Of a DNA stretch of 64,000 bases, positions 6,636 to 55,948 are shown piece by piece. Position 1 is the stretch's first letter; the number at the start of each line of letters is the position of its first letter. The notes beneath the pieces are model-generated. The model saw only the letters and a list, made by a program, of their open reading frames with translations, was not told where the DNA came from and did no database searches. Position numbers and translations under genes: made by a program. The DNA lies in IMG/VR virus record IMGVR_UViG_3300025133_009608, positions 1 to 64,000 of that record, one strand, 5' to 3'.

Positions 6636-7124
6636 TTATTTTACCTCGTATTCGACTTGCGAATCCTCAAGAACGATTGTGCGATTTATGGGCTTGAACT
6701 TTTTATGCAAATATTCTACCCCATATCTCCCAGAAGGAAGCCTCGCATTCCAGTGGCCATCAATATTTGTCTTTAATGACCTAATAACTTCACTTCCATC
6801 TCCATATATATTAACCACAACATCGGGGATTGGCTGCTTAGATTTATTTACAATATACCCAAATGCCTTAATTTTTCCGACAATCAATGCTTGTACCTCT
6901 TTGGTATTAATATTCTCTTTCACCGGAGACTTTCCGACGGGTATGCCGGCGCTGGGCCTTGCGGACGATTGAGTGGTTGGCCTTATTTTTGATAGCTTAG
7001 AGACTTTGTTGTTTAATAACTTAATATTAGAATCCATAACATCCATTCTCTTTTCAATTCTGGATAACGTTTCTGTTATCTCGTAAATTGCGTCAATTGC
7101 CGACTGTTCTTTCTTTTTAGTCAT
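6636..7124 (-). CDS. Coiled-coil plus carboxypeptidase-regulatory-like beta-sandwich protein
   Basis: N-terminal heptads. C-terminal GYIVNKSKQPIPDVVVNIY...TNIDGHW...LPSGRYGVEY. Confidence 0.6.
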   Translation of the reverse strand: MTKKKEQSAIDAIYEITETLSRIEKRMDVMDSNIKLLNNKVSKLSKIRPTTQSSARPSAGIPVGKSPVKENINTKEVQALIVGKIKAFGYIVNKSKQPIPDVVVNIYGDGSEVIRSLKTNIDGHWNARLPSGRYGVEYLHKKFKPINRTIVLEDSQVEYEVK

Positions 7125-10675: not shown

Positions 10676-13600
10676 CTACTCCCGACCCTTTTTGCTCTTT
10701 CTGTCTTTTCTTTTTGGCTCCAAGATCGGCTTCCCCCTCTCGTCCGTCCAGCTGGCCGCAATAATGTGCGGGTCCTTTCGATCCCCGATGACCATCCATG
10801 AGATTTCATCAGTGCAATCATCTGATTTTGCCACTATTGTTAAGACTCCCATGTTAACGCTACCGCGAACGGGCGTCCAGCCTGACTCGTTTGATGTAAA
10901 GCACTGGACAAAGTCGCACAGCGAGTTAAACGTACCATTCTCCATTCCAAACTCCGCGTCTATATCTATCGATGCAGATCCCATAACTAAATCAACGACT
11001 CCACGATATATCAAATCTGCCCTTGGGCCCTCGATAAAAGAGTGCACGAGATCATGAGTCTCGCTCATTTCAACAAGTGGATGTCGAATCTTAAAGGTGC
11101 CAGACCCCTTGCTCAACACACCTGCGACTTGGAGGTCGTTATCGATATACACGTCCCAGTCGAAGGAAGATTCGTTACCGCCGTTTGTATGGATATCGGC
11201 GCAGTAAATCTCCCCGTCCGCCCTTACGTCGAGGTCAACTGCGAGGTCAGTTACAACCGCCCCTGTTATAGTCAGGTTTTTAACCTCCATAGATTCAATC
11301 TCAGAGCTATTGGCGTAAAGTGTATCGTCGAGATGAATATTTTCTGCCCAGATAGTGTTCGCCTTGCTGACAGAGTCGCTCACAGGCGAATAATCTCCAA
11401 GGTCTATATACCCATCTCCATTGTGGTCATATCCAATTTTAATATTCTCACCGGCCGGTATTCCTTCGTTATCATCCACAAGACTTACTCTTAAGGCTCC
11501 AGATCGTAGGGTCGGAGTCCAAACGTAGTTGGTTGCAAATATTTCACTAGCGATGACCTCCTCCTCGGCCTTTAAAACATAGCACGTTATATTTCCACTG
11601 AGGAGGGAATCTGGACTTTCGCCCCCCCCGACATCCAGAGCTTTAAGGCCGAGATATGACCCAGCTGGATCATTTATCATTATTGATCCTTCAATTATTG
11701 CCCCCGCAAGACTCAGGTCGCCACCGGCGCTCAGGTCGCCACCGATGCTCAGGTGCCGACTGATGCGATCTCCCCACGCGTATTGATCTTCAGGGTCCAT
11801 GGCGCAAAAATCACTTCCATTATTATCCGCATTTATATTTCCAAATATCTGAACGTTATTTCCGGGAGGACACTCATCAAAGCCGAATATGCTACGGGGT
11901 CCGTCCTGGAATATCGCGATATTTCCGGCCCCAGGATAAGCCCCGTCCCCAGAGCCTCTAAACGTATTATTTAAAATATTAATATTCTGACAAAGAGATG
12001 CGTCTGGATCGATTGAAATATATGAATTTAAAAATTGACAACCCTTAATTGATATGTTCCCAAAACAATCTTCAGACGACATCGAGGGATCGAGGTCAAC
12101 TCCCAAAACCCTAATACCACCGCTCTGAGGAGATAAATAACTAGAGTAATCAAATATTATTCCGCTGAATCTTGCTCCCCAATTTATATTATTATTATCG
12201 GAGTCTTTTATTGCCGGGTCTATGACGAAGACTTTTGACAATTTTAATGTAAAATCCGACAGGCTTACAAAGCCGGCCCCTATACCCTGGTGCGCGGCCG
12301 GTGCCGAATCAGAAACTCCAGGGCCCGCAAGAAAGATTGCACCGTGCCTTTCCTGAGAGATTATCTTGTCGGCCTCGGTATCTGAGTATGAATTTGTTAT
12401 ATCCAATACTGTTGACTCTCCCTCTCCGGTAATATTCAGTGGAAAATTTATATAAATACCGTCCCTTGCCACGGAAGGTATAAGATCTGCCGTATCAGCC
12501 CCGACGGCCGGGAGGCCGGTATCTACGCTTACTATGTGCGTCCCCGATTTCAAATGAACCGTCGGAACTCCGGCAAAAGGAAATAAGTCCGAAAATCTCT
12601 TTGCATATTTTATTGCTTTATTTATACTCGAAAAATGCCCCATTCCAGGCTGAGGGCTGACCGTTATTGAGTTAAGAAGCTTCAAATCTAAATCATTTAT
12701 AAATAGCCGCAAGTCATAAGCCGTAGCATCTGGATCGCTCCACTCTATAGAGCCCAAAGCACAAAACTCTCCGGAGTCAAACGGAGAAGCGCACGTTATG
12801 GCGTCAGCTAGGGCGAAAACAACCTCTCCCCATTCATTTATTGCGACAAATATCTTATCGCCGCCTAAAGCTCCGGAATTCTCAATCTCAGTCTTTAAAC
12901 TTATCTTTTCTAAAATCTCAAATCGGGTGCCCTTTACGTAGCAAACTCCGGATGAGATATCAATAACATACTTCCCGCCCTCTATTGCTCCAGAGGCCGC
13001 AGTTGAAAGCTCCACTCCACGAATCACTCCATTGGATCGCATTTCAGAAATTGGAGCCTCAAGCACCTTCGATATCGCGCTACTCCCAAGATCCTTAGCC
13101 CCCGAGAGCCCGCGCTCGACGCGAGAAAATACCCTGGGAGTTGTGCTTCCTGCTCCGGTTATTCTTCCATTCCCACTTTCAACGAGGAGCCTTCCCAGGA
13201 ATAGGTTTTCCTCCATACTTGCTTCGGGCGCTCCAACTATAGAAACCGACGTTGAATCACTTGTTAGCGAATCAATATAGGAATAAAAATCCGAAACATC
13301 GTCTATATATAATCTAATTTTCAAATTAGATATCCCAGAAAAAATATCCTTATATATCCTTTTCCCAATTGACAACCTCTCTATTCTCCCTCCATCCAGG
13401 GAAAATAAAACCGAAGATGTTATCGGGTCTATAGATATCTCCAATTCGGCGTCTTCGCTTAAGTCGCCAGAAAAGTCCGATATAGCAAATCGGGCTCGAT
13501 CGCCCAAGTCATATGGAGCTTCATACACCATTCTTTTTTTGGAAAATATATTTCTATCTTTATCCATAAAAATATCAACCAAGGCATGGGCAGGGTGGGA

Positions 13601-15442
13601 GGATACTTCATCGAATGAGAGCGAGTCGAATGAAACCGAATTCTTATACACTAAAAACTGAGGAGTATTAAGAGTCGATAATTTTGGCTGCCCAGAATCA
13701 GTGATAATCTTTGTCGAAGATATAGAGTCAATTCTATAAGAGCTAGCGCCTGCTGCACTGATAATGTTTATCAAATCATGCTTTGCTAGCTCATCTTTTG
13801 TAAAATCTGCAGTCCTGGTTTCTATGGAGCTCGTCAGGTCGGTGATTACAGGGACTTCACTATTTATTTTTTCTCCCAACCCAGAATAAGCCGAACCCTG
13901 GATGAAGTACTCATTATCAGGCTGCGAGTCAACTTCAACGCCATCTATGTGAGCAAAGCCAACGGAATCAATCCCGTCATCAGTAACTCTTGAGGCTGTT
14001 AGCGTATATGCCGTTGTGGCGTTACTTGGTATATTGTGTACTATGGCAATCTCAGATGACAACCCTTCAACGTCAAGCCTGTATGCTAACGCCGGATGTG
14101 CGCCCTCGGAAAGCTGTTCATTTATTTCACGAATAATTGTATCTATTGTCTGCGCCGGGTCTACAGAGGAATAAAGATCCAGAGTTAATGCGTCACCACT
14201 TTCAAATGTTAGTTTAAAATAGCGATTAGAGTTACTAATCTCGCTCGGCCTACAGCCGGAGGTTACAATAGCTGCAGCTTCTGGGTTTGAAATCTGAATA
14301 ATCCCCGATGACGTTTTGTCTGCAAACTGCACCACTCCCAGTAGTAATCCAGTCTGAATTGATGGTTGATTCTTATTCTTTAAAATCTTGGCCTGATCTC
14401 CAGAAAAGGAATCTGCAACAAGCCTCCCAAACACCTCTACGGACTCCACCTTTTCATCTACAATGGTGGCGCTAGAGATCTGCATGTCCTTGGTCTCGCC
14501 ATCGCCTACCGTAACTCTAACTATATCTGACGCCTCGACCCCGTAAGAGGACATCTCCTGTGGAGAGTCAAAGCTTACCACGGAAGTGTTCCTTGTATCA
14601 TATGTGCTGTACTTTGAATGTGATGCGTCAGAATCGTCTACAGTTGTTCTTCCGTCGTTAATATCAGAAACACTCGTTGATACTATATTTCTGGCGGCAC
14701 CATTTTGATGAAAAATATTTTGATGATCATCCAGTTGGCGGTTGGCCAGATTGATAGTCTCCTCTATTGCCCCCTGAGTATCGTCCGATTGAATATCTCC
14801 AGAGACATTGGCTCGATCAAAAAACACCTGATTTGCAGAATGAGACTTATTCAGAGAGGATATGTCGGAGCCATCATAATTTATATGGGATCCATAAATA
14901 TCTTCAAATACTTCCTGTGCGGTTGCGGACGGCGTAAAATTGGTTGCAACCGACTGGCTTCCGTTTCCTATCTCGTCTACAGTTATCGCCATCGCCCGGT
15001 GCCTATTTGTTGCGTCCAAATGCACATGGGCCGTCAATATTGCGGCAATCTCATCTAGGCGGCCTATATACCGGTCTATCTCTCCAACTAGGGCGAGAAC
15101 TTCCTGCTGAATAAGTCCAGTTGGAAAGTCCAGATTTAATTTGGACTCGGAAATCGCAGCAGCAGAAGAAACATCAGAATTAGATATTGGGCCAGAAACC
15201 AATCCGGCCATACTTAGTGCCTCTTTGGATATGTTTCCATTTCCATCTAACGCTCGATTCAATCTATCTGCTACCGAGTTCCCAACCGCACCCTGCGGAT
15301 TTACTCCCAGAGTTCTTTCTATTTGAAATATCGCGGACCTAAGGCTATTCAGAACGTCTGAGCCCACCTCCACAATATTATCGCGTACGGCCGGTATTTC
15401 AATAGATGAATCTAGTTCACTTGGATACTTTGATTTTGACAT
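10676..15442 (-). CDS. Large virion appendage protein with beta-helix and C-terminal intramolecular-chaperone-like domain
   Basis: 1588 aa. Contains HFSSINKAIKY...VHLKSGTH...ITGEGESTVL. The C-terminal SKGSGTFKIRHP...LVHSFIEGPRADLIYRG...ISWMVIGDRKD is a domain commonly ending phage fibres. Confidence 0.6.
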   Translation of the reverse strand: MSKSKYPSELDSSIEIPAVRDNIVEVGSDVLNSLRSAIFQIERTLGVNPQGAVGNSVADRLNRALDGNGNISKEALSMAGLVSGPISNSDVSSAAAISESKLNLDFPTGLIQQEVLALVGEIDRYIGRLDEIAAILTAHVHLDATNRHRAMAITVDEIGNGSQSVATNFTPSATAQEVFEDIYGSHINYDGSDISSLNKSHSANQVFFDRANVSGDIQSDDTQGAIEETINLANRQLDDHQNIFHQNGAARNIVSTSVSDINDGRTTVDDSDASHSKYSTYDTRNTSVVSFDSPQEMSSYGVEASDIVRVTVGDGETKDMQISSATIVDEKVESVEVFGRLVADSFSGDQAKILKNKNQPSIQTGLLLGVVQFADKTSSGIIQISNPEAAAIVTSGCRPSEISNSNRYFKLTFESGDALTLDLYSSVDPAQTIDTIIREINEQLSEGAHPALAYRLDVEGLSSEIAIVHNIPSNATTAYTLTASRVTDDGIDSVGFAHIDGVEVDSQPDNEYFIQGSAYSGLGEKINSEVPVITDLTSSIETRTADFTKDELAKHDLINIISAAGASSYRIDSISSTKIITDSGQPKLSTLNTPQFLVYKNSVSFDSLSFDEVSSHPAHALVDIFMDKDRNIFSKKRMVYEAPYDLGDRARFAISDFSGDLSEDAELEISIDPITSSVLFSLDGGRIERLSIGKRIYKDIFSGISNLKIRLYIDDVSDFYSYIDSLTSDSTSVSIVGAPEASMEENLFLGRLLVESGNGRITGAGSTTPRVFSRVERGLSGAKDLGSSAISKVLEAPISEMRSNGVIRGVELSTAASGAIEGGKYVIDISSGVCYVKGTRFEILEKISLKTEIENSGALGGDKIFVAINEWGEVVFALADAITCASPFDSGEFCALGSIEWSDPDATAYDLRLFINDLDLKLLNSITVSPQPGMGHFSSINKAIKYAKRFSDLFPFAGVPTVHLKSGTHIVSVDTGLPAVGADTADLIPSVARDGIYINFPLNITGEGESTVLDITNSYSDTEADKIISQERHGAIFLAGPGVSDSAPAAHQGIGAGFVSLSDFTLKLSKVFVIDPAIKDSDNNNINWGARFSGIIFDYSSYLSPQSGGIRVLGVDLDPSMSSEDCFGNISIKGCQFLNSYISIDPDASLCQNINILNNTFRGSGDGAYPGAGNIAIFQDGPRSIFGFDECPPGNNVQIFGNINADNNGSDFCAMDPEDQYAWGDRISRHLSIGGDLSAGGDLSLAGAIIEGSIMINDPAGSYLGLKALDVGGGESPDSLLSGNITCYVLKAEEEVIASEIFATNYVWTPTLRSGALRVSLVDDNEGIPAGENIKIGYDHNGDGYIDLGDYSPVSDSVSKANTIWAENIHLDDTLYANSSEIESMEVKNLTITGAVVTDLAVDLDVRADGEIYCADIHTNGGNESSFDWDVYIDNDLQVAGVLSKGSGTFKIRHPLVEMSETHDLVHSFIEGPRADLIYRGVVDLVMGSASIDIDAEFGMENGTFNSLCDFVQCFTSNESGWTPVRGSVNMGVLTIVAKSDDCTDEISWMVIGDRKDPHIIAASWTDERGKPILEPKRKDRKSKKGRE

Positions 15443-39994: not shown

Positions 39995-42900
39995 TTACTC
40001 CCAGAGCGAAGAAAGGGAGGTTGCGGTCATTCGACCCTCGGATGGGGCGGCATCAGTTTCAACTCCAACATTTACACCACCAAGATCTGAAGCAATCTTT
40101 GTAGTGTGAACTGCTCGTGCATTAGCAATGCTTCGCTTAAAGGCTTCAAATGCCTTTCCGTCAAATGACATAATCTCATCCACTTGATTGTCCAAGGCAA
40201 CCTTTGACATGGGAAGAAGGCCCTTGCGCTGCATTTCCATGCCTACATCATAGGCCCTTCTAAGCATTACTCGGTATTCCTCTCTGCCTTCATCTGCCTT
40301 CTTCTCGGCAAAGCTTTCGCTTAGTTTTGCTTTAATTACTGACGCAGAATCCGACCCAGAAGCTTCTTTAGTAGCATCGGCAGCAGAAGCAGAGACCTCT
40401 ACTGAAGCCTCTATTGCTTCCGTGGCAACCGTCGAGACGGGAGCCTCGGCAGTGGCCGACCTGAGAAGGTCCGCTCTACGTGCGGCACGAGCCTCTAGCA
40501 CTTTACGATCGGCATTTCTAAGAATGCCCTCACGACGCTGACGACGAAGACTCATTGCATCCTTTACCAGAGCATCAACCTCGCTAGAGGCTTCGGTCTC
40601 GATAGGTACCGGAAGATCTGACTCAAGAACGTCATTAACCATGGACTCATCCAGTGGGTCTTCTACGCAATTAAGGGGATCTTCTGCGCAATTAAGGGGA
40701 TCTTCTACATATCCGATTTCTTCTCCTGCGCATGGTTCTGCGGTCTTTGTCATTGCTCTCGCAACTCTGATAAGAGCCTTGGCCTCACCGGTTACCTCGT
40801 CGCAATCTTTTACGGCCGCGGATGCGAGCTTAGTAAAGTGACCGCGCTGTTCAGCAGACAACTTAGACAGGTTGTCATAAGTCTCGGCGACCATCGATAT
40901 TTCATCAGCAGACTCGTCGAGCTGACTATGCGCCGTCTTGAGTTGGCGCACAATTTCAGCAGCCAAAGAAAGCGTCTCCTCTGCGTCTCCGCCGGCGTCT
41001 CCTCCGGGCATGATGTTTACGTCAACATCGGCAACACGATCGTCGGCCAGTTGGTCTGCAAGGTCACGAACCTCTGAGATTAGGCCTTCCATTTCGGCAA
41101 GCCTATTATCAATAGCCTCACCTGGAGGGACCTCTTCTTCTGCGAGTGACTCTTCCATAGGGGCCTCGTCCATAGGTGGAAGCTCCGGCATTCCGCCGGC
41201 CTCCATCGATGGAGCTTCAGCAAGCTCTGCGCCCATCGGCGGAAGCTCTGGCATCGGAGCCGCACCAACATCCTGCGCACCCTTAAGGAGGCCGCGCACA
41301 TGCTCGAGGCCGCTGGCGCGAATTTGCTTACAGACTTCTTGACCATACTCTCTACTTGCAAGCCACTTCCACTGGCCATCAAGCTCTTCGCCAAATATCT
41401 CTCCAGCAGTTGCTGTAATTACATTATCATCGCCAGAAAATACGCTAAACTCAGAATTCTCGCGATCAACGCTTCCATCCGAAGCCTTTTTCACGGAAAG
41501 CTTTGTCTTTAGTCCTGGGCCAGTATATGCCGCACGACTAAGCTTGCCCTTAACCTCTGCGTCACCGGGGTGCATACCATCTGCCCCACCCATGCTGCCA
41601 GTCTGCTGCATTTGCTTGTCCTGGTTGTCTCTAATGCTTTTCTGTGCCGCACCCTCATCCTTGTAGGTTCCGGTTGGCTCTACGCCTTCCGATCCGCCCT
41701 GATGATAGGCCGTGCGACGAATTCTGCGCTCTTCGAGCTCTGCACGACTAAGCTTGCCCTTAACCTCTGCGTCACCGGGGTGCATACCATCTGCCCCACC
41801 CATGCTGCCAGTCTGCTGCATTTGCTTGTCCTGGTTGTCTCTAATGCTTTTCTGTGCCGCACCCTCATCCTTGTAGGTTCCGGTTGGCTCTACACCGTCC
41901 GCGCCGCCTTGGTGATAAGCAACACGACGACGCATCTCTGCTCTCTTGCGTAATCTTGACTCGTTCATAATTTCCTCCATTATTGAATTTATTGAAATGT
42001 CATCTACATAATCTCCAAGCCCGTTATTATCACTCGCGAATGCGACTGACGGTTCACTCAACCCAGGAGGTGGGACTGGAATAACCCCTCCTGCGTCGTT
42101 TTCAAAATCTGGCGCCTCTCCAGTGTCGCTGCCAAACATGGTTGGCGTCGGAAGATCTGGAGTTGGCAATGCGGCCGGCTCACCGGACACAGTTGTATTC
42201 TCTGCCAGAGAAGTCTCTGGAAGGTTTGTGTTTAAAATATTTTTTAGCTTATCGATTGCAGCTTTAACCTCTGGGGAGTCGGAATTTCCATACTCCTCTA
42301 TGGTCCTTACAATTGCTGATATCTTTGAGGCATCTGCAATCTCGGATGATGACAGATTAGAAGTCTGCTCTGCAACTTCAAGAGCAACCGCAGAAGGCTC
42401 TTCCGCCTCCTTCACTAGGCCATTATTCCCAAGAAAGCTTTTTACAATGCTCTCTCTTCTGGTTAGCGAGCATCCGTCAGGACCACACGCAGTCTTCATT
42501 ATTCCATTCAAATGCTCGGCCTGTTGGACAGATAGCCTCCCAAGCATCGCGTCAACATCTTCAACGCCATGGGATATAAACTCATTTCTATAGTCTCTTA
42601 GTGAGGCAACCACCTTTAGCAGTACTGCTCCCGGCTCGGCCGGAGTTACTACAAGGCTATATTCAATCGGCTTTAATCCGACATTCACCTCTCCGTAGGC
42701 AGTGTGATTCGTAACGTGCGGGCAGTAATCACTCTGAACTTGTGCTCGATTCCCACAGTCAGTGCATATCGACGTCTCGACGGCGGTGCCCATGGACCCG
42801 TACCGAACCATGCCAGTCTCTACCTTTCTTGCCAGGTCTGGGTAATTGACCTTGTCTAAGGCACACAGGCCAACAACTTGCTTGAACTTTTCGTCGTAGT

Positions 42901-43321
42901 GAGTATCCAAAATAATTCCACGAATTCCGTCCACAGAGCTTGATTCGTGATCACGACATAGCGGCATTCCAACCCACTTAGTGGTTGCCTTCTTTAGTTC
43001 GCTCTCTGGAAATAGATCGCCATTATTATTTTTATGCGGATCCACGTTTCCATGCCACTTCCAATCTTCATCATAAAAGCCCCAAGCATCCTCTCCGCTT
43101 GCGAGCTTCTTTGGAAGCCCGTTCTCTCCGAGAATCGCCGACTCAGCAGCCTTTAAGAATATAATTGAAAAGTATAGAAAATCGTCCGACTTGGGAGCAA
43201 TAGATCTTATATCATTTGCAAGCTTTGTCATGCGGTCTACCAAAACTTTATTTGCCAAAATTTCTTTGGTAGAAACGGACTTAATCACAGTCCCGGACGA
43301 ATAGCTAACTTTCTTAATCAT
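39995..43321 (-). CDS. Prohead protease (HK97/assemblin fold) fused to long scaffold
   Basis: NNNGDLFPESEL, LCRDH (His), YGSMG (Ser), CTDCG..CPH zinc site, EYSLVVTPAEPGA; acidic coiled-coil C-terminal region. Confidence 0.75.
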   Translation of the reverse strand: MIKKVSYSSGTVIKSVSTKEILANKVLVDRMTKLANDIRSIAPKSDDFLYFSIIFLKAAESAILGENGLPKKLASGEDAWGFYDEDWKWHGNVDPHKNNNGDLFPESELKKATTKWVGMPLCRDHESSSVDGIRGIILDTHYDEKFKQVVGLCALDKVNYPDLARKVETGMVRYGSMGTAVETSICTDCGNRAQVQSDYCPHVTNHTAYGEVNVGLKPIEYSLVVTPAEPGAVLLKVVASLRDYRNEFISHGVEDVDAMLGRLSVQQAEHLNGIMKTACGPDGCSLTRRESIVKSFLGNNGLVKEAEEPSAVALEVAEQTSNLSSSEIADASKISAIVRTIEEYGNSDSPEVKAAIDKLKNILNTNLPETSLAENTTVSGEPAALPTPDLPTPTMFGSDTGEAPDFENDAGGVIPVPPPGLSEPSVAFASDNNGLGDYVDDISINSIMEEIMNESRLRKRAEMRRRVAYHQGGADGVEPTGTYKDEGAAQKSIRDNQDKQMQQTGSMGGADGMHPGDAEVKGKLSRAELEERRIRRTAYHQGGSEGVEPTGTYKDEGAAQKSIRDNQDKQMQQTGSMGGADGMHPGDAEVKGKLSRAAYTGPGLKTKLSVKKASDGSVDRENSEFSVFSGDDNVITATAGEIFGEELDGQWKWLASREYGQEVCKQIRASGLEHVRGLLKGAQDVGAAPMPELPPMGAELAEAPSMEAGGMPELPPMDEAPMEESLAEEEVPPGEAIDNRLAEMEGLISEVRDLADQLADDRVADVDVNIMPGGDAGGDAEETLSLAAEIVRQLKTAHSQLDESADEISMVAETYDNLSKLSAEQRGHFTKLASAAVKDCDEVTGEAKALIRVARAMTKTAEPCAGEEIGYVEDPLNCAEDPLNCVEDPLDESMVNDVLESDLPVPIETEASSEVDALVKDAMSLRRQRREGILRNADRKVLEARAARRADLLRSATAEAPVSTVATEAIEASVEVSASAADATKEASGSDSASVIKAKLSESFAEKKADEGREEYRVMLRRAYDVGMEMQRKGLLPMSKVALDNQVDEIMSFDGKAFEAFKRSIANARAVHTTKIASDLGGVNVGVETDAAPSEGRMTATSLSSLWE
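40656..40708. repeat. 21-bp coding tandem repeat (EDPLNC x2.5)
   Basis: ggatcttct[ag]cgcaattaagg repeated. Confidence 0.8.
41532..41893. repeat. 210-bp-period coding duplication in scaffold region
   Basis: 41532..41683 is identical to 41742..41893. Confidence 0.9.
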
Positions 43322-48138: not shown

Positions 48139-49836
48139 CTACATCTCAGGAAGGCCACCGCCCATGTCTGGTGGGCCGCCCATATCTGGCACTGGGCCGC
48201 CGCCAGGAGGCACCCCGGGAAGATCACCGCCGGCGCCGCCGGCGGACTCCATGTCAGTCGGCTCTGGGATGCTTTTTTCTGGATCAATATTTAACAACTC
48301 AGAAAGCCTCATTCCGCCAAGAATCTGCTGCTCCTTTGTAAACACCGCCTCGTCTATTACTTCTTCTCTTAATCTTTTTCTCTCTTCCTCATACGAGAGG
48401 CCGAGGCTTCTATGTAGCGTTTGCAGCGAAACCTGCTTGTTTCCAACGAATTGTCCAATTTGTTGTATATAATCAGCCATATCATATAAATTCATATGAT
48501 TAAAATCAATTGACGGAACTTGAAGCTTCTTTTCTCCATCTTCATATTCAAAAAAATCTTGAATTTCACAGATTGGAGCAAAAACCTTTCTCTCCAGCCA
48601 TTTCTTCATCATGTTTCTAAATATATCATATCTCTGACGCAAAACCTCCAATCCAACGGATGAGCTTGCATACGATGCAGATTCCTGATCTATCAAAGCC
48701 TTCGGCGTCATAAGTCCTGCATATAGATTATTTGTAATAAGCTCTATATCTCCGGCAATATCAAGAGTTTGCCCTGAAAACCCCACGCGCTCAATGGTTA
48801 CGCCGCCGTGGGTTACAATTTTAAAATCCTTATCGTACTGGGCTTCTTCTAGGACATTTTTGAACGCCTCTATGTCCGCCTGCGTGGGCCTGTACTCTCC
48901 CTCCCCTCCGAGCTTTACAAGTGTTAGTGGATTCACCATGCCGTCAGCCTGAGCGAACTTACACTCCCTTAGTTTGTCGTAATGCATAAGGTCTTTATAT
49001 ACAGACACTATTATGGACGTACCGCGCACATCATACGGAGAGCTAAGCAGCTTTAGGTGAGATACATTGAAATCATCTAATGGAATATTCTGCCCACGGC
49101 GGACATGTTGCATGATATGCTTTGGAATGTACTTTCTCATGGCAACATCTGACGGGGCAGTTGAGTTTACAATCCTCTGCAGTGTTGCATCCGGACGGAG
49201 AGAGATCATAGTCTGATCCCCAATCACGGATTTCTTCACGTGAATATAATCGGGATTAAGAATCGAAATCCTATTCCAAGTGCCCGTGCCATCATCTAGC
49301 TCGGCATACGGGAATACCTCTCCGTTCTTCCAGAATTCTAGTGCCGCACCATAAACTACGGAATATAAATCAATCTTTTCTGCCATTTCCATGAAGAATT
49401 GCTGAACTCGCTTATTCTTGCATGTGATATTTATCTTGCTAATTGGATACGATGCATGAAGATTTATTGCGTTTCTAACGATTGGATGAGTGTCATAAAA
49501 CACTCGATTCCAAGCGTTCATAGTTACCCGATCGCGGGGCAAGTTTAGGTTCGCAAGCTGAAACAATGGAGAATAAATCTCAGGAGCCATCCTGTCGGAA
49601 GAGCTTGTTGTGCCTGGACCTGCCATTGGAGATGCAATAGAGCCGGTTTTCAAAATATCCAAGCTCTTCTTTTTAAAAGAAGGACTATTCACAACTGCGC
49701 TAAACGATGCGCTAGTCTCACGCTCATTCGCCTCAACGTTATCTATTGCACTAGATATTTGAGCACGACGTACTCCAGAAACGGACTCTGCAGCTGTCTT
49801 TGAAATTGGACCCGGGGGCCTAGATGTTCTTCTCAT
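48139..49836 (-). CDS. Portal protein
   Basis: Directly after TerL. HPIVRNAINLHASYP...EFWKNGEVFPY...ILNPDYI...RGTSII...VLRQRY...WLERKVFAPI is a portal pattern. Confidence 0.85.
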   Translation of the reverse strand: MRRTSRPPGPISKTAAESVSGVRRAQISSAIDNVEANERETSASFSAVVNSPSFKKKSLDILKTGSIASPMAGPGTTSSSDRMAPEIYSPLFQLANLNLPRDRVTMNAWNRVFYDTHPIVRNAINLHASYPISKINITCKNKRVQQFFMEMAEKIDLYSVVYGAALEFWKNGEVFPYAELDDGTGTWNRISILNPDYIHVKKSVIGDQTMISLRPDATLQRIVNSTAPSDVAMRKYIPKHIMQHVRRGQNIPLDDFNVSHLKLLSSPYDVRGTSIIVSVYKDLMHYDKLRECKFAQADGMVNPLTLVKLGGEGEYRPTQADIEAFKNVLEEAQYDKDFKIVTHGGVTIERVGFSGQTLDIAGDIELITNNLYAGLMTPKALIDQESASYASSSVGLEVLRQRYDIFRNMMKKWLERKVFAPICEIQDFFEYEDGEKKLQVPSIDFNHMNLYDMADYIQQIGQFVGNKQVSLQTLHRSLGLSYEEERKRLREEVIDEAVFTKEQQILGGMRLSELLNIDPEKSIPEPTDMESAGGAGGDLPGVPPGGGPVPDMGGPPDMGGGLPEM

Positions 49837-49845
49837 TTTTGCTTC

Positions 49846-51627
49846 CTAAAATCTTTTAGTAACCCTTGCCAGGGTTGGCATGGGCATCGAAATTTGTTTT
49901 TCCGTTCCAGGCTTAACAGAAAAGCCTTTTGTCGTATCAAATTTATACGCAATGTATGCGTAAATAAGCGCCATCAATCCGTCATTTGGGGTAGTTCCTT
50001 TTTTAAATGTCTTTATCGGCTGGCCGCCGGTCGTCCTAATCCCAGACTCCATAGACGTACAGTGGTCTATTAGCCACTCTAGATATTCATAGCTCTTCCA
50101 TGGAAATCTAATCTTCCCCTTTCGAAACAGGTCAAACACTTCCTCGATTAATAAGTCTTTATTATAAGATATAATTAGCTCATCCGGCCTATATTTTATT
50201 GGTTTTATTAGACTTCCGCTTCCCTGCGCTCCTATAAATTTATCTCCGTACTTCATCTGCAGATCCCCAACAACATCTTGGCCAAAAAACCAATCCGATA
50301 CTCCACGTTGAACTCCAAATCTGCGATACATTTCATTTATAGTTTCTTTTTTATAATTAAAGTCTGTTCTTTTTAATTTATGAGCATGCTCAACCAGCAA
50401 GGTTCCATCTGGCTGTGCCGACAGCACTACCACGCACGAGTACGACTGGCCGCCCAGAGAGTCCTTGGAGTCGGCCTTGCCGCCCCAGTCTACACCCAAA
50501 TAAGTTGACTTTGCCCTTCCGTCAATCTTCTTTGAAAAATACCTATCCGGGTCGCGGCACTTCTCATAAATTTCCGCCTTTGTTAATGGCATTCCGGCAC
50601 CGGAATAAAACTCTCCAATTACTTCATTATTCCAAATCCTTTCTGTTTGAGTTGGGTTATTTTCAGGCATTAAATTTTCAATATTCTCTTTTGTAAAATA
50701 AGGAATATAAAGCTGATTAATATGAAATCCGACAAACTTGCTTTCAGACTCCGGCTTCGACGCCACCCACTTGCCGCGATCTAACGCTTCAATTTTCTTC
50801 TGCTCGGTTCCGCATAGCGGGCACTTTATCGTATAACCATGCAGCCAAATTTTCTTCCATCTATCATCATTCGGAAGATAAAATGGGTATGTTTCATTAC
50901 AATTTTTACACCCAAGGTGGTAATACCTCTGATCTGAAATGTCCCACATCGCTGCAAAGTGAGAATTTCGAGACTTTGGGGTTCCAAAGTAAACCTGAAC
51001 ACCTTGAGCGGTTTGTCCATATTTAGCAGCAGTTAAAATCTTTGTCGCATTGCTTACGGCGTGGCCGACGGCATCCTGAACCTCATCGATAAACATTACG
51101 TCGGCCGTCATACCACGAATCCTATCGCCATCGGCGCCGAGAGAGTCGACCCACAGGGTTCCGGTATTAAACTGCTTCATTGTCAAGTTATCAACAGCAT
51201 TGGTACTATCTAACTTATTTTGATTTATAAAATCATCTTTTGCCGTTCGAATTAGAGTCTCCAGCTTATCTTGAGTAAACTTCTTTACCTGAGCCAGGGC
51301 CGGGAACAAGTGTACGACCCTAATTGGCGGTGTCGTAAATAGTCCGCTATTTGTAAAGTAAAGATCAAGAGCTCCAGCCATCATTGTAGCGCCAACCTGC
51401 CGGCCCTTCTTTATAACTACTGGCTTGCCCGTCTTCTGCGTGGCCTGAAGCGCAATATATCTATATATATCGCTCATAAATCTCCAGCCGTTGTCGGAGA
51501 TTGAAAACTCCATTCCGTCCAGAGTTAGCTTATCTTTAACGAAGCATGTCGGATCAAGATCTAAAAAGCTAGATCTTAACTGCTGAAATATCTCTTCTTC
51601 TTTCTTTTTTCTCTTTTCTTGGGACAT
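49846..51627 (-). CDS. terL: Terminase large subunit
   Basis: IKKGRQVGAT (Walker A), FIDEVQD (Walker B), GTPK coupling motif, CKNC/CPLC zinc ribbon, GVDWG nuclease motif. Confidence 0.92.
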   Translation of the reverse strand: MSQEKRKKKEEEIFQQLRSSFLDLDPTCFVKDKLTLDGMEFSISDNGWRFMSDIYRYIALQATQKTGKPVVIKKGRQVGATMMAGALDLYFTNSGLFTTPPIRVVHLFPALAQVKKFTQDKLETLIRTAKDDFINQNKLDSTNAVDNLTMKQFNTGTLWVDSLGADGDRIRGMTADVMFIDEVQDAVGHAVSNATKILTAAKYGQTAQGVQVYFGTPKSRNSHFAAMWDISDQRYYHLGCKNCNETYPFYLPNDDRWKKIWLHGYTIKCPLCGTEQKKIEALDRGKWVASKPESESKFVGFHINQLYIPYFTKENIENLMPENNPTQTERIWNNEVIGEFYSGAGMPLTKAEIYEKCRDPDRYFSKKIDGRAKSTYLGVDWGGKADSKDSLGGQSYSCVVVLSAQPDGTLLVEHAHKLKRTDFNYKKETINEMYRRFGVQRGVSDWFFGQDVVGDLQMKYGDKFIGAQGSGSLIKPIKYRPDELIISYNKDLLIEEVFDLFRKGKIRFPWKSYEYLEWLIDHCTSMESGIRTTGGQPIKTFKKGTTPNDGLMALIYAYIAYKFDTTKGFSVKPGTEKQISMPMPTLARVTKRF

Positions 51628-52266: not shown

Positions 52267-52389
52267 AATATCTTATCCATCTCGCTATTAACGTTGTTAA
52301 TTTGTATCACTTTCAAACTGTTCCTTATAGCGCCTTTGGCCGCATTATTATCGGACTCATCCGTAACTTATATGATAATTATTACTAGA

Positions 52390-52588
52390 TTATCTTACGG
52401 TACTTTCCATCAAGTCCCTGACGGAGTCGACATTAAACCCCTTCTTTGTCCTTGAGATTAGCTCATATATTATACCAGAAAGTATATGCTCTTTTGTAAA
52501 ACACTGAGTTAAGCCGTCCGCTATGATCGGCTCATCGGTCGTGAGCGTTGCTCGCTTATTATCTATATGCGATGTGATCTAATCTCAT
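52390..52588 (-). pseudogene. Probable internally deleted VOC/glyoxalase-like gene remnant
   Basis: RBS GGAG, then ATG gives MRLDHIAYR* (a VOC-like start). Another frame gives ...TTDEPIIADGLTQCFTKEHILSGIIYELISRTKKGFNVDSVRDLMESTVR*, resembling a VOC/HPPD-like C-terminus. Confidence 0.4.
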
Positions 52589-52663
52589 TATATGCTCCAA
52601 ACACCAAGGTCCGCCGAGGCTGTACTTGTCGAGCCTGATTGCTTTTCCCGAATCTATTACTCT

Positions 52664-52906
52664 CTATTTTATTTCATCAACAGACTTGTCCATCTCGTCG
52701 TCGAAATCCACTCTTAACCTTATCATCGGGTTAAACTTTGCCTTACGCCGATCGAGAAGGAGGGCCCCCTGAGGCCTAACGAGCTCTCCCTGTATATCGA
52801 TTGCTTCAAAGTCAATTTCAGTTTTATCTTTATATATCACCTTTGGCTCGGGCACCGGATCGTCGGCTAATGCAGGAAGAGATAGCGCTAAGAGCAAATA
52901 AATCAC
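52664..52906 (-). CDS. Secreted CglF/GltF-like (adventurous gliding motility) small protein
   Basis: Signal peptide plus KTEIDFEAIDIQGELVRPQG.LLLDRRK..F.PMIRLR.DF..EM.KSVD, matching the remembered CglF consensus. Confidence 0.65.
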   Translation of the reverse strand: MIYLLLALSLPALADDPVPEPKVIYKDKTEIDFEAIDIQGELVRPQGALLLDRRKAKFNPMIRLRVDFDDEMDKSVDEIK

Positions 52907-53389
52907 TTATTCCCCTTTCGTAAGATCTGGAACTATACGAATATACGTAGCCCTGTGATTCAGCGCTCCGCCGGGAGGCGGAGCGGTATCATGTAATACG
53001 CTTAGCGGCAGTGAGTTTAGCTCGTGAATTTTCCATCCAGTCGGCAAGCTATCAGTCACGATCCTTCTCGTAAATGAATCCTTATCCTCCCCTCCCAAGG
53101 CCGAGATTCCCTCTGCGTGATATCCAAATATAATCACTGGCGCACGACCAACATTGGACTTTCTATATCCCAACCTGGCCCTATAGTGACGAGCCTGCTC
53201 GTCGCTCGTATGCGGGGCGGATAAATTAATTTTGCTAGATACCGATCCTATCGCGGCGAGTACTTCGCTTCTTCTTTGCTCGAGAAGGTTTGGATTCATA
53301 GATGCTATAACCGCATCCAAAGCATCAGCCTCTTTTACAAAGCCCCTGCCATCTAACGAGTTTGCAATTTTAATCAGATCCCTAATCAC
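52907..53389 (-). CDS. Head-module protein with LIKIANSLDxxG leader
   Basis: MIRDLIKIANSLDGRGFVKEADALD. Confidence 0.55.
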   Translation of the reverse strand: MIRDLIKIANSLDGRGFVKEADALDAVIASMNPNLLEQRRSEVLAAIGSVSSKINLSAPHTSDEQARHYRARLGYRKSNVGRAPVIIFGYHAEGISALGGEDKDSFTRRIVTDSLPTGWKIHELNSLPLSVLHDTAPPPGGALNHRATYIRIVPDLTKGE

Positions 53390-53681
53390 CCGCTTCTCCG
53401 CGAAACAATGGGGATGTTGATGTGAACCCCTGAATTCCCCTAAGAGATGGATTCAAATCCGCCCCAGACTCTATCGCTGCTACGGCCCTGGCCACATATT
53501 CTAAGAGAGTGTGAACTGACTTTATTTGCCCAGAAGTAGGTCGACCCTCTTCTAGCGCCTGCGCCGCAAGCAGGCCAACTGACCGAGCTAGAGCTACAGC
53601 GTCTGAGCTTACAGTGGCATTTTTTATTAAATTATAATTTCTTTTTGATGCTATCTTTTTCATTTTAAAATCCTTATGCAA
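53382..53681 (-). CDS. Head-module small protein
   Basis: MKKIAS and LIKNAT motifs. Confidence 0.5.
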   Translation of the reverse strand: MHKDFKMKKIASKRNYNLIKNATVSSDAVALARSVGLLAAQALEEGRPTSGQIKSVHTLLEYVARAVAAIESGADLNPSLRGIQGFTSTSPLFRGEAGD

Positions 53682-54690
53682 AGTAATTCTTTATAAAGTC
53701 AACGCCGCGATTATTGGTATCTTTTTCTTTTGAATCACCAGGCCCGTATGTTCCTCGATCTTTAAATATATGATATCCGCTGTCTGCAACAACTTGCATG
53801 ATCGACAGCTCTTCGCGAGGTGTGATGTCATATTTCTTATTAAGAAATCCATAAACCTCTTCCATATCATTCCCTGCTGAAACATGAGCATTTATCATAA
53901 TTCCAGAAATTGCACGCTCAAAAGCGGTCACTGCAATCACCATATTGTTTGGAGTAGATGCCTCTTTTGTTAGCTCGGAGTATTCAACTTCGGCACCGGA
54001 ACGGGAAATCCACGCTGGTACAACATTTTCCTCTGCATCTTTTGAAATAACGATATCTTCGGTTGCATTTTTCTTATGAGAGTCTTTAAATTTCTTTTTT
54101 AACTTTCCTAGGTGATTTTTTAAAACCATTATATCTTTCATTACATTAAGCCTAACATCTTCGAGAACCGACAGGTCAATGGAGTTATCCGAGTCATCCC
54201 TTACTGCTCTCGACATCTCCGAATTCAGCTTGTCCAAGAAGCTTACTGCTCTTTCGCAACCACTTATGGATTCGCCATCATGCTGCGGGATGTTTGCAGG
54301 ATATATCTGATAAACATAATCCATAAACTTTGACAAATCTCCGTCATTTGCATAATCAGTTTCTACTTCCTCTTCAGAATCTGCGTCTGACTTGGACACA
54401 AAGCTTCCAGGAAGAAGCTCCTCTCCGTGGTCTTCATCCATACCCTCCAGATCCTCTTCTATGTATTCTAGAGTTTCCTGCATATCATCGATTCCACCTT
54501 CACCCTCGATAAACTCTTCGACGTACTCGTGAACGCTTACATCTGACTCTGGTGACTCAAGCTCTTCCTCGAAGAAAACACCTTCATCGTCAACAAATGA
54601 TTCAATATATGAGTCGCTGGAGTTATCCATGAAGCTGGGTGAAGCCTTTCGGCTGATTTTTTTATTAGACATTATAATTCTCCTATCCAA
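53674..54690 (-). CDS. Acidic head-module protein
   Basis: Highly acidic N-terminal half; SRKAS, KKNAT, TKEAS. Confidence 0.6.
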   Translation of the reverse strand: MDRRIIMSNKKISRKASPSFMDNSSDSYIESFVDDEGVFFEEELESPESDVSVHEYVEEFIEGEGGIDDMQETLEYIEEDLEGMDEDHGEELLPGSFVSKSDADSEEEVETDYANDGDLSKFMDYVYQIYPANIPQHDGESISGCERAVSFLDKLNSEMSRAVRDDSDNSIDLSVLEDVRLNVMKDIMVLKNHLGKLKKKFKDSHKKNATEDIVISKDAEENVVPAWISRSGAEVEYSELTKEASTPNNMVIAVTAFERAISGIMINAHVSAGNDMEEVYGFLNKKYDITPREELSIMQVVADSGYHIFKDRGTYGPGDSKEKDTNNRGVDFIKNYFA

Positions 54691-55165: not shown

Positions 55166-55948
55166 TTATGCGAGTCCGGATACCCGATCAATCTCTTTAA
55201 AATATTTATCCAGCATTCTTCCTTTTATCAAGTACTCCTTAAACGCTCCCGTGAGAGGAACAGTGGATGTTAGCCCTAGTTTGTCCAAAATATATAATGT
55301 TTTTTCAGAGTCTATATTCATAGACTCTCCTATTGCCGATGTTATATAAGACTGCTTTATTCCAATCATCTTCGGGCGGCCGAACAGGGCGAGGTTATCT
55401 AATACGAAAGATATTATTTTTTCATCGATCTCAAATCCATATCTCACCGCCAAATTTACTGCGCGATAAACTCTTCTTGGGTCATCCATAAGGGTTACCT
55501 CTGGTGGCATTACCGTCCTTACTACTTTGTTTTCAATATCTTTTTTGCCCATTTCGGTTGGGTCCTCGATATCATCACTATCGAGCGGCTTATGAAGCGT
55601 ATTCATTGTAAAATCTCTGCTATAAACCTCAAGCAAATCTTCACCCCTTGAAAACTCAGCGGCATCTTTGGAAATAAAATTTGATGAAAAATCTAATATA
55701 TATTTATCCATATATATTGACGAATGCCCGTCGGAAAACACTTTGAATCCAACGCCAAGGGAGTCAGCCATTAGCACTGCTAGCCTAATTATGTCTGGAC
55801 TATTCGTAGTTAAGTCGACATCTTTTGTTATAATCGGATCTACGCCGAGATAAATATCTCTTGGGATGCCTCCAACTATCTTTGGCGTACTTATCATATA
55901 TCTTTTCGATATATCCAAAATTTCCGCCAGGGCGTTATCTAGAAGCAT
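55166..55948 (-). CDS. CCA-adding enzyme / poly(A) polymerase family nucleotidyltransferase (head and neck domains only)
   Basis: VGGIPRD, DVD, SRDFTMN, DDPRRVYRAV. Confidence 0.9.
   Translation of the reverse strand: MLLDNALAEILDISKRYMISTPKIVGGIPRDIYLGVDPIITKDVDLTTNSPDIIRLAVLMADSLGVGFKVFSDGHSSIYMDKYILDFSSNFISKDAAEFSRGEDLLEVYSRDFTMNTLHKPLDSDDIEDPTEMGKKDIENKVVRTVMPPEVTLMDDPRRVYRAVNLAVRYGFEIDEKIISFVLDNLALFGRPKMIGIKQSYITSAIGESMNIDSEKTLYILDKLGLTSTVPLTGAFKEYLIKGRMLDKYFKEIDRVSGLA

What the first reader, a model, noticed from the sequence alone, without database searches (positions are those of the whole stretch)
52664..52906. Phage-borne CglF/GltF-like gliding-motility protein
An 80-aa secreted protein matching the remembered consensus of the Myxococcus CglF family, part of the Agl-Glt gliding apparatus of Myxococcota and Bdellovibrionota. 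It points to such a host. It may modulate motility of infected cells or jam an outer-membrane Glt complex used as receptor.
Basis: partly seen in the sequence, partly recalled or inferred. Interest (0 to 1): 0.6.

Follow-up and report, generated by a model that had tools for sequence, protein, structure and literature searches.

The report
Phage copy of gliding-machine linker GltF
A 317-kb marine jumbo phage carries its own well-conserved copy of GltF, the small periplasmic protein that links the inner and outer parts of the myxobacterial gliding machine. The same lone gene sits on at least 78 other viral contigs, so it points to marine Myxococcota as hosts and to GltF as the part phages use to take hold of that machine.

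Summary
Window 52664..52906 (- strand) is an 80-aa ORF with a short signal peptide. It matches NCBIfam CglF (NF033764) at E 1.3e-13 and 50.8 bits, below the 90-bit equivalog cut-off.

- **Family:** its closest cellular relatives (64-70% identical, marine Myxococcota MAGs) lie between gltE and gltG in a full glt cluster. They also score only 55-59 bits. So this is a true GltF/CglF homologue.
- **Phage setting:** the window is part of a 316,664-bp phage with terminase, portal and 7 tRNAs. No other glt gene was found in it.
- **Spread:** stand-alone GltF genes occur on 78 IMG/VR contigs from at least three terminase types, never beside other glt genes.
- **Selection:** phage copies are under strong purifying selection (dN/dS 0.03-0.055) and have taken on phage base composition.
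- **Docking:** a complex model places the phage protein between GltC and the TonB-like end of GltG from the closest MAG (0.83; best control 0.44). This is the topology published for Myxococcus xanthus GltF.

Most likely the protein takes the GltF position in the host machine. Whether it sustains, retunes or uncouples the machine is untested. I found no earlier report of a phage-borne GltF.

The parts
52664..52906 (-). Coding sequence of the phage GltF/CglF homologue (80 aa plus stop, GTG start)
   Evidence: ORF list and translation. NF033764 E 1.3e-13, 50.8 bits. The 120 listed database relatives are 65-100% identical. dN/dS is 0.055 against the copy in the related phage contig L008.
52912..52915 (-). 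Shine-Dalgarno-like GGGG, 5 nt before the GTG start. The upstream ORF's TAA stop (52907-52909) abuts the start codon.
   Evidence: Read directly from the sequence.
52865..52906 (-). Residues 1-14: predicted Sec signal peptide. It is short, has no charged n-region, and ends in an Ala-x-Ala-type site.
   Evidence: Alignment with phage and cellular homologues, all of which have an N-terminal hydrophobic leader ending before an acidic stretch. Not tested with a predictor.
52781..52846 (-). Residues 21-42: conserved extended segment, modelled against the TonB-like C-terminal domain of GltG
   Evidence: Interface residues 21-42 touch GltG 553-587 and 636-653 in the complex model. Invariant columns Y25, T29, I31, D32, F33, G40 and E41. 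This corresponds to the GltF strand that pairs with the GltG C-terminal domain in the published M. xanthus model (PMC11761067).
52736..52780 (-). Residues 43-57: conserved linker between the two docking segments
   Evidence: Invariant V43, P45, Q46, G47 and R53. In the published model GltF also touches GltD along this path. GltD was not included in my model.
52667..52735 (-). Residues 58-80: C-terminal helix, modelled inside the TPR crevice of GltC
   Evidence: The monomer model shows a helix at 60-79 and nothing else ordered. In the complex, residues 58-80 touch GltC 263-419, 488-491 and 560-567, with the lowest expected errors at about 0.6-1.3 A. Among the cellular copies examined, only the marine MAG clade shares the last 14 residues with phage groups A and B, differing at most in the next-to-last residue.
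52267..52663 (-). A 397-nt non-coding gap between this gene and the packaging module (205-aa ORF, terminase, portal). The gene is therefore the last one of the upstream unit.
   Evidence: ORF list and sequence. No Rfam match. The role of the gap is unknown.
48139..51627 (-). Context: portal (48139..49836) and gpA-type large terminase (49846..51627), which establish the phage setting
   Evidence: PHROG 16240 E 1.4e-51 and PHROG 675 E 2.5e-63; Pfam GpA_ATPase.

Best explanation
The gene encodes a phage-made copy of GltF/CglF, the small, largely disordered periplasmic linker of the myxobacterial Agl-Glt (or paralogous Nfs-type) envelope machine. After Sec export and leader removal, about 66 residues remain. 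This mature protein is expected to take the GltF position in the host machine. Residues 21-42 lie against the TonB-like C-terminal domain of GltG, on the motor side. The C-terminal helix (58-80) sits in the TPR crevice of GltC, on the outer-membrane-platform side. The phage thereby controls the supply of the piece that couples motor to surface. Both docking segments and the linker are conserved as tightly in phages as in cells. I therefore judge it most likely (about 0.45) to be a working stand-in that keeps or resets the coupling during infection, much as cyanophage psbA resupplies a labile subunit or prophage P-FimU replaces a pilus part. Uncoupling or exclusion is the main alternative (about 0.3). 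What is shown: homology, phage setting, stand-alone spread in phages, purifying selection, and nearest cellular kin sitting in glt clusters. What is modelled only: the docking. What is inferred: export, host identity and physiological effect.
For: - Homology: NF033764 E 1.3e-13.
- Cellular kin: relatives 64-70% identical lie in the order OM barrel, GltC, GltD, GltE, GltF, GltG, CglE/GltH in marine MAGs.
- Phage setting: terminase, portal, 316.7 kb, 7 tRNAs, and no other glt homologue found.
- Spread: 78 IMG/VR contigs carry a stand-alone copy with no GltC, D, E, G or H within 2.5 kb. They come from different terminase types. Further copies sit on 353-kb, 280-kb (circular) and 179-kb phage-like contigs.
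- Selection: dN/dS is 0.03-0.055 between phage copies and 0.036 between cellular copies. GC3 is 0.48 in the phage gene against 0.60-0.85 in cellular ones.
- Tree: phage groups A, B and L020 form one clade (86/89) in a polytomy with the marine MAG copies, apart from the other Myxococcota clade (95/86).
- Complex model with GltC and the GltG C-terminal domain of the closest MAG: score 0.83 in three runs. The best control scored 0.44 (GltC replaced) and unrelated partners scored 0.00. That mark was reached by 51 of 78 solved complexes and 2 of 108 mismatched pairs. The runs agree in at least 76% of contacts and partner pLDDT is at least 59.
- The contacts match the published M. xanthus model (PMC11761067).
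- No solved relative exists, so the pass is not recalled from a structure.
Against: - No experiment and no RNA data: only marine DNA metagenomes hold the stretch.
- The complex test was calibrated on pairs, not three chains. A close relative of the true partner is expected to pass, so the model shows likeness to host GltF, not function.
- The host is inferred only from the gene's nearest kin. Phage GC (43%) is well below that of the MAGs (52-62%).
- The leader in this phage is unusually short and uncharged.
- It is unresolved whether the MAG machine drives gliding or an Nfs-like surface transport.
- Nothing separates 'sustains' from 'uncouples'. Excess of a two-sided linker could itself uncouple the two partners.
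Confidence: 0.62

Rival explanations
1. Dominant-negative uncoupler or superinfection-exclusion factor. The phage protein binds GltG and/or GltC but stops force transmission. This could work through small sequence differences or simply through excess, so that each partner holds its own linker. The outer-membrane platform would be frozen or hidden, gliding would stop, and competing phages that use Glt surface parts or its energy coupling for entry would be shut out.
For: Small exported phage proteins often serve exclusion, and phage proteins that disable or replace parts of a motility machine used as receptor are known for type IV pili (PMC11436027; PMC12952977). The phage protein is modelled on both partners. 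Phage copies show recurrent differences from cellular ones, for example Met instead of Leu at residue 61 in 110 of the 120 best database hits.
Against: A blocker would need only one interface. Yet both docking segments and the linker are conserved across phage lineages as tightly as in cells. The phage-specific substitutions are conservative. There is no evidence that any phage uses Glt parts as receptor.
Confidence: 0.27
2. The protein acts on a different TonB- or TolA-like C-terminal domain in a host that has no Glt machine. In that case the family in phages has drifted to a new target, and the host is not a myxobacterium.
For: Phage GC content (33-56%, median 39%) is mostly far from the MAGs' 52-62%. 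Contact with GltG is a strand addition of the kind TonB-like domains accept generally (established knowledge). With GltC replaced, the model still scored 0.44. Group C (T4-like) copies have a diverged C-terminal helix.
Against: In groups A and B the GltC-binding helix is the most conserved part and matches that of the marine MAG clade, differing at most in the next-to-last residue. This is hard to explain without a GltC partner. GltF was reported only from Myxococcales and Bdellovibrionales (PMC3169522), and none of 14 control genomes matched the family.
Confidence: 0.07
3. Passenger DNA or artefact: a recent accidental capture of host DNA, a chimeric assembly, or a cellular contig mislabelled as viral.
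For: The gene sits in a variable stretch between conserved phage genes. The related contig L008 has different neighbours there.
Against: The same region is 100% identical in two independent IMG/VR contigs and is found in three marine runs. The gene is kept while its neighbours vary. dN/dS is 0.055 with synonymous sites near saturation, and base composition matches the phage. 78 viral contigs carry it without any glt neighbour.
Confidence: 0.02

Closest known systems
GltF / CglF of Myxococcus xanthus (MXAN_4868; NCBIfam NF033764)
   Same: About 80-90 aa with a signal peptide and a mostly disordered mature part. It is the same profile family (E 1.3e-13). The modelled two-point docking is also the same: a strand on the TonB-like end of GltG and the C-terminal helix in the GltC crevice. 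In M. xanthus the protein is essential for gliding and localises at focal adhesions (PMC3169522).
   Different: It is encoded by a phage, stands alone, and has no gltE or gltG neighbour. It scores below the 90-bit equivalog cut-off, as do the marine MAG orthologues. Its role in motility is untested.
GltF of marine Myxococcota MAGs (records titled Deltaproteobacteria bacterium UBA796, UBA2957 and SAT32, and Myxococcota bacterium XB_MAG53)
   Same: 64-70% identical over the whole length. The last 14 residues match, differing at most in the next-to-last one, and the start of the mature protein is of the same type. This is the nearest cellular branch in the tree.
   Different: The cellular copies lie inside the cluster OM barrel, GltC, D, E, F, G, H and have GC3 of 0.60-0.85. 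The phage copy has GC3 of 0.48 and a few recurrent substitutions such as Met61.
NfsF, the GltF paralogue of the Nfs spore-coat machine (my own knowledge of Myxococcus genetics)
   Same: A small linker within a contiguous A-to-H gene order. That is also the order seen in the marine MAG cluster.
   Different: I did not test whether the MAG machine, and so the phage protein's target, is of the Glt or the Nfs kind. A weak GltJ-like hit in one MAG left this open.
Prophage P-FimU of Pseudomonas aeruginosa phages (PMC12952977)
   Same: A phage-encoded homologue of a structural part of a host motility machine that is built into the machine in place of the host part.
   Different: P-FimU is a surface-exposed minor pilin on temperate phages, and its defence role has been demonstrated. 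GltF is periplasmic, these phages look lytic and very large, and no role has been shown.
Cyanophage psbA-type auxiliary genes (my own knowledge)
   Same: A host-derived gene for one subunit of a large host machine, kept under purifying selection in many unrelated marine phages, and thought to keep the machine running during infection.
   Different: psbA supports energy supply. GltF would support or reset a surface-motility or transport machine, and it is not known whether GltF turns over quickly.

Membership tests
GltF/CglF (NCBIfam NF033764, equivalog model) | Whole-protein score at or above the curated 90-bit cut-off | tested here: not met
   50.8 bits. The positional orthologues in marine MAG glt clusters also reach only 55-59 bits, so the cut-off excludes this whole marine branch. 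I therefore file the protein as a homologue in the wider GltF family, not as an NCBIfam equivalog.
GltF/CglF homologous family (wider sense) | Significant full-length profile match and close identity to proteins that sit in the gltF position | tested here: met
   E 1.3e-13 over profile positions 16-88 of 88. It is 64-70% identical to proteins encoded between gltE and gltG. In the class holding the closest MAGs, 170 of 182 genomes have a match.
GltF/CglF homologous family (wider sense) | Small size (about 80-90 aa) with an N-terminal signal peptide and a mostly disordered mature part ending in a helix | tested here: met
   80 aa with a hydrophobic leader. The monomer model has mean pLDDT 57.5 and only a helix at 60-79, as described for M. 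xanthus GltF. The signal peptide was judged by eye only.
GltF/CglF homologous family (wider sense) | Gene located in a glt/nfs cluster between gltE and gltG | tested here: not met
   No other glt homologue was found in the 316.7-kb phage, nor within 2.5 kb on any of 78 viral contigs. This is a feature of the cellular locus rather than of the protein, and it is what makes the phage copies distinct.
GltF/CglF homologous family (wider sense) | Contacts with the GltC crevice and the TonB-like C-terminal domain of GltG | tested here: met
   By model only: score 0.83 against a best control of 0.44, a mark reached by 51 of 78 solved complexes and 2 of 108 mismatched pairs. The runs agree in at least 76% of contacts and partner pLDDT is at least 59.
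GltF/CglF homologous family (wider sense) | Required for gliding, recruited to focal adhesions, and transferable between cells (the Cgl phenotype) | not testable with these tools
   These are genetic and microscopy phenotypes (PMC3169522).

The most novel reading that the evidence does not exclude
Stand-alone gltF may be a signature host-takeover gene of a large, so far unassigned guild of marine large and jumbo phages. That guild covers 78 or more IMG/VR contigs, several terminase types and genomes up to about 350 kb. On this reading they all infect planktonic or particle-attached marine Myxococcota and all take hold of the same single point, the GltC-GltG linker. GltF would then be the regulatory weak point of the Agl-Glt/Nfs class of machines. 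These phages would either keep infected cells gliding or attached, or use the linker to shut out rivals.
Probability: 0.4. Interest if true: 0.75.

Novelty: new variant of a known kind. Interest (0 to 1): 0.62.

Why it matters
- **Host marker.** The gene is a simple sequence marker linking dozens of uncultured marine large phages to marine Myxococcota. A 2026 survey of myxobacterial viruses recovered few viral genomes for several little-sampled Myxococcota classes and mentions no viral Glt gene (bioRxiv 10.64898/2026.09.14.751636).
- **A clue to the machine.** Out of a machine of at least 17 proteins, phages repeatedly picked the 80-aa linker. That singles out GltF as the likely control point of force coupling between motor and outer-membrane platform. 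So far this idea rests only on structural modelling in M. xanthus, with no biochemistry.
- **A wider class of takeover genes.** Phage genes that copy a structural part of a host motility machine are known for type IV pili. This finding would extend them to gliding machinery and to lytic jumbo phages.

Tried and rejected
- **Family libraries:** Pfam, PHROGs and PADLOC gave no match for the protein. Its five immediate unknown neighbours also had no match, and NCBIfam gave them none either.
- **Rfam:** nothing in the whole window.
- **Expression:** only marine DNA metagenomes hold the stretch and no RNA run does. I did not use read laying, because DNA contigs would add nothing beyond the two identical independent contigs.
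- **Shared backbone among phages:** the window's terminase was not found in five other GltF-bearing virus records. Two of these carry a T4-type terminase. A single phage family is therefore rejected.
- **Single capture:** a one-clade test for all phage copies was not rejected (p-AU 0.44). However, L030 nests with cellular copies at 96/99 support. With only 62 columns the number of captures cannot be settled.
- **Organism behind the 179-kb NCBI contig and the 280/353-kb ENA contigs:** these records are not held.
- **Gliding versus Nfs-type machine in the MAGs:** the GltJ search gave only weak sub-threshold hits.
- **Monomer fold:** low confidence, so I made no fold search.
- **Terminal repeat:** the genome's first 100 nt recur once near the end, but the match does not extend, so it is not a simple terminal repeat.
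- I re-ran it reading the sequence by reference.

Full report
**The observation**

Window 52664..52906 on the - strand is an 80-aa ORF. It starts with GTG directly after the TAA stop of the upstream ORF, and a GGGG run lies 5 nt before the start. Residues 1-14 form a short hydrophobic leader ending at an Ala-x-Ala-type site, followed by an acidic, proline-containing stretch. In homologues the leader is longer and usually has Lys or Arg at position 2. Export is inferred from the sequence only.

NCBIfam NF033764 (adventurous gliding motility protein CglF) matches at E 1.3e-13 and 50.8 bits over profile positions 16-88 of 88. This is below the curated 90-bit equivalog cut-off. Pfam, PHROGs and PADLOC have nothing.

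**The setting is a phage**

- All long ORFs of the window lie on the - strand, and GC is about 43%.
- Downstream of the gene come a 397-nt gap, a 205-aa ORF, a gpA-type large terminase and a portal.
- Upstream there is a CCA-adding enzyme.
- The window is bases 1-64000 of a 316,664-bp IMG/VR virus record rated 94% complete. The record has 7 tRNA genes.
- Searching the whole phage with GltC, GltD, GltE, GltG and CglE from the closest MAG found no other glt homologue.

**Is it really GltF?**

Four marine MAGs encode proteins 64-70% identical to it. Their records are titled Deltaproteobacteria bacterium UBA796, UBA2957 and SAT32, and Myxococcota bacterium XB_MAG53.

In the most complete of these loci the order is: outer-membrane beta-barrel (TIGR04565), GltC (628 aa), a 1042-aa TPR protein in the gltD position, GltE, the 81-aa homologue, GltG (FHA plus TonB-like C-terminal domain), CglE/GltH, a choice-of-anchor-D protein, then rplC. 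The other three, shorter loci match over the parts they cover.

These positional orthologues themselves score only 55-59 bits on NF033764. The 90-bit cut-off therefore leaves out the whole marine branch. I file the phage protein as a GltF/CglF homologue, not as an NCBIfam equivalog.

The family is common in the phylum:
- 253 of 401 sampled genomes of the MAGs' phylum have a match.
- 170 of 182 genomes of their class have a match.
- The five genomes nearest to the phage protein (66-70% identical) are small, at 3.5-4.2 Mb.

**What is known of GltF**

In M. xanthus, gltF (MXAN_4868, listed as 89 aa with a signal peptide) is needed for gliding. A functional GltF fusion localises at focal adhesions. 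The gene was reported only from Myxococcales and Bdellovibrionales (PMC3169522).

An AlphaFold-based model of the whole machine describes GltF as mostly disordered. Its C-terminal helix sits in a crevice of GltC. A strand pairs with the TonB-like C-terminal domain of GltG, touching GltD on the way. GltF thus bridges the outer-membrane platform to the motor-linked part. The authors state there is no biochemical evidence yet (PMC11761067).

**Spread in phages**

The phage copy is not a one-off.

- A first IMG/VR scan found 28 viral loci.
- A second scan, using an alignment as query, found 78.
- None of the 78 has a GltC, D, E, G or H homologue within 2.5 kb. Their GC is 33-56% (median 39%), and contigs reach 288 kb.

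Gene maps show several unrelated contexts:

| Group | Members | Context |
|---|---|---|
| A | the window, L006-L008 | jumbo phage with gpA-type terminase |
| B | L009-L019, L021-L025 | a conserved block with a trypsin-like protease, a roughly 800-aa protein and a HAD/PNK-like protein |
| C | L026-L029, L031-L033 | T4-like, with SbcCD-like nuclease, T4-type terminase and gp20-type portal |
| singletons | L020, L030 | L020 lies near a DnaE-type polymerase |

The window's terminase is not found in five group-B-like or other records. Two of those records carry a Terminase_6N enzyme: one is 203 kb and rated 100% complete, the other is 118 kb.

Three further database hits lie on a 353-kb linear contig, a 280-kb circular contig and a 179-kb contig. 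All three are densely packed with small unannotated ORFs, as in large phages.

Within group A the stretch between the 338-aa and 205-aa ORFs varies, but GltF is kept.

**Selection and origin**

- Between phage copies dN/dS is 0.03-0.055, with synonymous sites close to saturation. Between cellular copies it is 0.036.
- GC3 of the window's gene is 0.48, against 0.60-0.85 in the MAGs. The gene has taken on phage composition, so it is an old resident.
- A 62-column tree puts groups A, B and L020 in one clade (support 86/89). This clade lies in a polytomy with the marine MAG copies. The other Myxococcota form a separate clade (95/86).
- L030 nests with two cellular copies (96/99), which suggests a second capture. 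Group C sits on a long branch.
- Holding all phage copies together is not rejected (p-AU 0.44).
- Among the cellular copies examined, only the marine MAG clade shares the last 14 residues and the start of the mature protein with groups A and B. The other Myxococcota differ there.

This is the basis for naming that MAG clade as the likely host lineage. It is an inference from one gene, and phage GC is clearly lower than the MAGs' GC.

**Docking**

I folded three chains together: the mature phage protein (15-80), GltC (22-628) and the GltG C-terminal domain (535-653), the last two from the UBA796 MAG.

- The test returned 'the model supports binding; it does not show it'.
- The score was 0.83 in all three runs. 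The best control scored 0.44 (GltC replaced by an unrelated protein), and the two unrelated partners scored 0.00.
- That mark was reached by 51 of 78 solved complexes and 2 of 108 mismatched pairs. The calibration used pairs, not three chains.
- The runs agree in at least 76% of contacts, and partner pLDDT is at least 59.
- Residues 21-42 touch GltG 553-587 and 636-653.
- Residues 58-80 touch GltC 263-419, 488-491 and 560-567, with expected errors near 1 A.

This is the topology published for M. xanthus. No relative of GltF has a solved structure, so the pass is not recalled from one. A close relative of the true partner is expected to pass, though. The result shows that the phage copy still looks like a competent GltF, not what it does. 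On its own the protein models as disordered apart from a helix at 60-79 (mean pLDDT 57.5).

**Mechanism**

Shown:
- homology
- phage setting
- stand-alone spread in phages
- purifying selection

Modelled only:
- two-point docking on GltC and GltG

Inferred:
- export
- host identity
- physiological effect

Both docking segments and the linker are conserved as tightly in phages as in cells. A pure blocker would need only one interface. I therefore favour a working stand-in that keeps or resets motor-to-surface coupling while host gene expression is taken over. This is comparable in logic to cyanophage psbA (my own knowledge), and to prophage P-FimU, which replaces a pilus part (PMC12952977).

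The main rival is uncoupling or superinfection exclusion. Excess of a two-sided linker could do this without any sequence change. Phage-specific substitutions such as Met61 could also play a part; 110 of the 120 best database hits carry it.

Two less likely readings remain. One is a different TonB-like target in a host without Glt. The other is passenger DNA, which the selection and spread data contradict.

It also remains open whether the MAG machine drives gliding or an Nfs-like surface transport. The contiguous gene order is the Nfs-like one (my own knowledge of Myxococcus), and a GltJ search gave only weak hits.

**Novelty**

Searches of the held literature found no report of a phage-borne GltF/CglF. 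A 2026 preprint on viruses of Myxobacteria recovered few viral genomes for several little-sampled classes and lists no Glt gene among viral auxiliary genes. The protein is a new, phage-borne branch of a known family. The phenomenon is a new variant of a known kind, namely phage copies of host machine parts.

**Limits**

- No expression data: only marine DNA runs hold the stretch.
- No signal-peptide predictor was available.
- Bdellovibrionota were not searched.
- Host taxonomy below the phylum named in record titles was not disclosed by the tools.
- The tree has few columns.

Noticed in passing
window 53674..54690 (-): A 338-aa ORF whose first 130 or so residues are extremely acidic (long runs of Glu and Asp). 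It has no match in Pfam, PHROGs, NCBIfam or PADLOC, and it is conserved at 79% identity in the related contig L008. It might be a DNA mimic or a scaffold-like protein.
   Followed up: partly
window 52907..53681 (-) compared with L008:4635-6320: The stretch between the 338-aa ORF and the 205-aa ORF varies between related phages. The window has 99-aa and 160-aa ORFs upstream of GltF. L008 lacks the 99-aa ORF, keeps only a 28-residue trace of the 160-aa one, and has three unrelated ORFs downstream of GltF. GltF is the only gene kept whole, so this looks like a hot spot for accessory genes.
   Followed up: partly
window 52267..52663: A 397-nt gap without a convincing ORF lies between GltF and the packaging module, in an otherwise tightly packed genome. 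There is no Rfam match. It is AT-rich with promoter-like hexamers on the - strand.
   Followed up: partly
window 55166..55948 (-): A phage-encoded CCA-adding enzyme / tRNA nucleotidyltransferase (PHROG 2244, Pfam PolyA_pol head domain). This fits the 7 tRNA genes found elsewhere in the 316.7-kb genome (126-185 kb).
   Followed up: no
G000:C1 1-100 and 315962-316061: The first 100 nt of the phage record recur exactly once, about 600 nt before its end, and the match does not extend further. It is not a simple terminal repeat. It could be an assembly seam or a real short repeat.
   Followed up: partly
L030:6001-6255 (IMGVR_UViG_3300025133_001424): This viral GltF copy groups with cellular copies from two other Myxococcota genomes (G024, G116) at 96/99 support, rather than with the main phage clade. 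It is probably an independent capture from a different host lineage.
   Followed up: partly
G265:C98:7818-7946, G450:C50:16880-17053, G385:C5:38326-38505 (cellular genomes): GltF-like segments covering the strand-and-linker part occur inside very long open frames (1170, 1413 and 837 aa) in some Myxococcota. The docking motif may also exist fused into larger proteins.
   Followed up: no
window 10676..15442, 7121..10672, 39995..43321, 2178..5390 (-): Four very large ORFs (1588, 1183, 1108 and 1070 aa) in the window were not annotated here. They are probably structural or injected proteins of the jumbo phage.
   Followed up: no
G000:C1:201737-202363 (-), outside the window: A weak match (E 5e-4) to the choice-of-anchor-D / Ig-like protein that follows the glt cluster in the MAGs. 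It is probably just a shared Ig-like fold in a phage surface protein.
   Followed up: no
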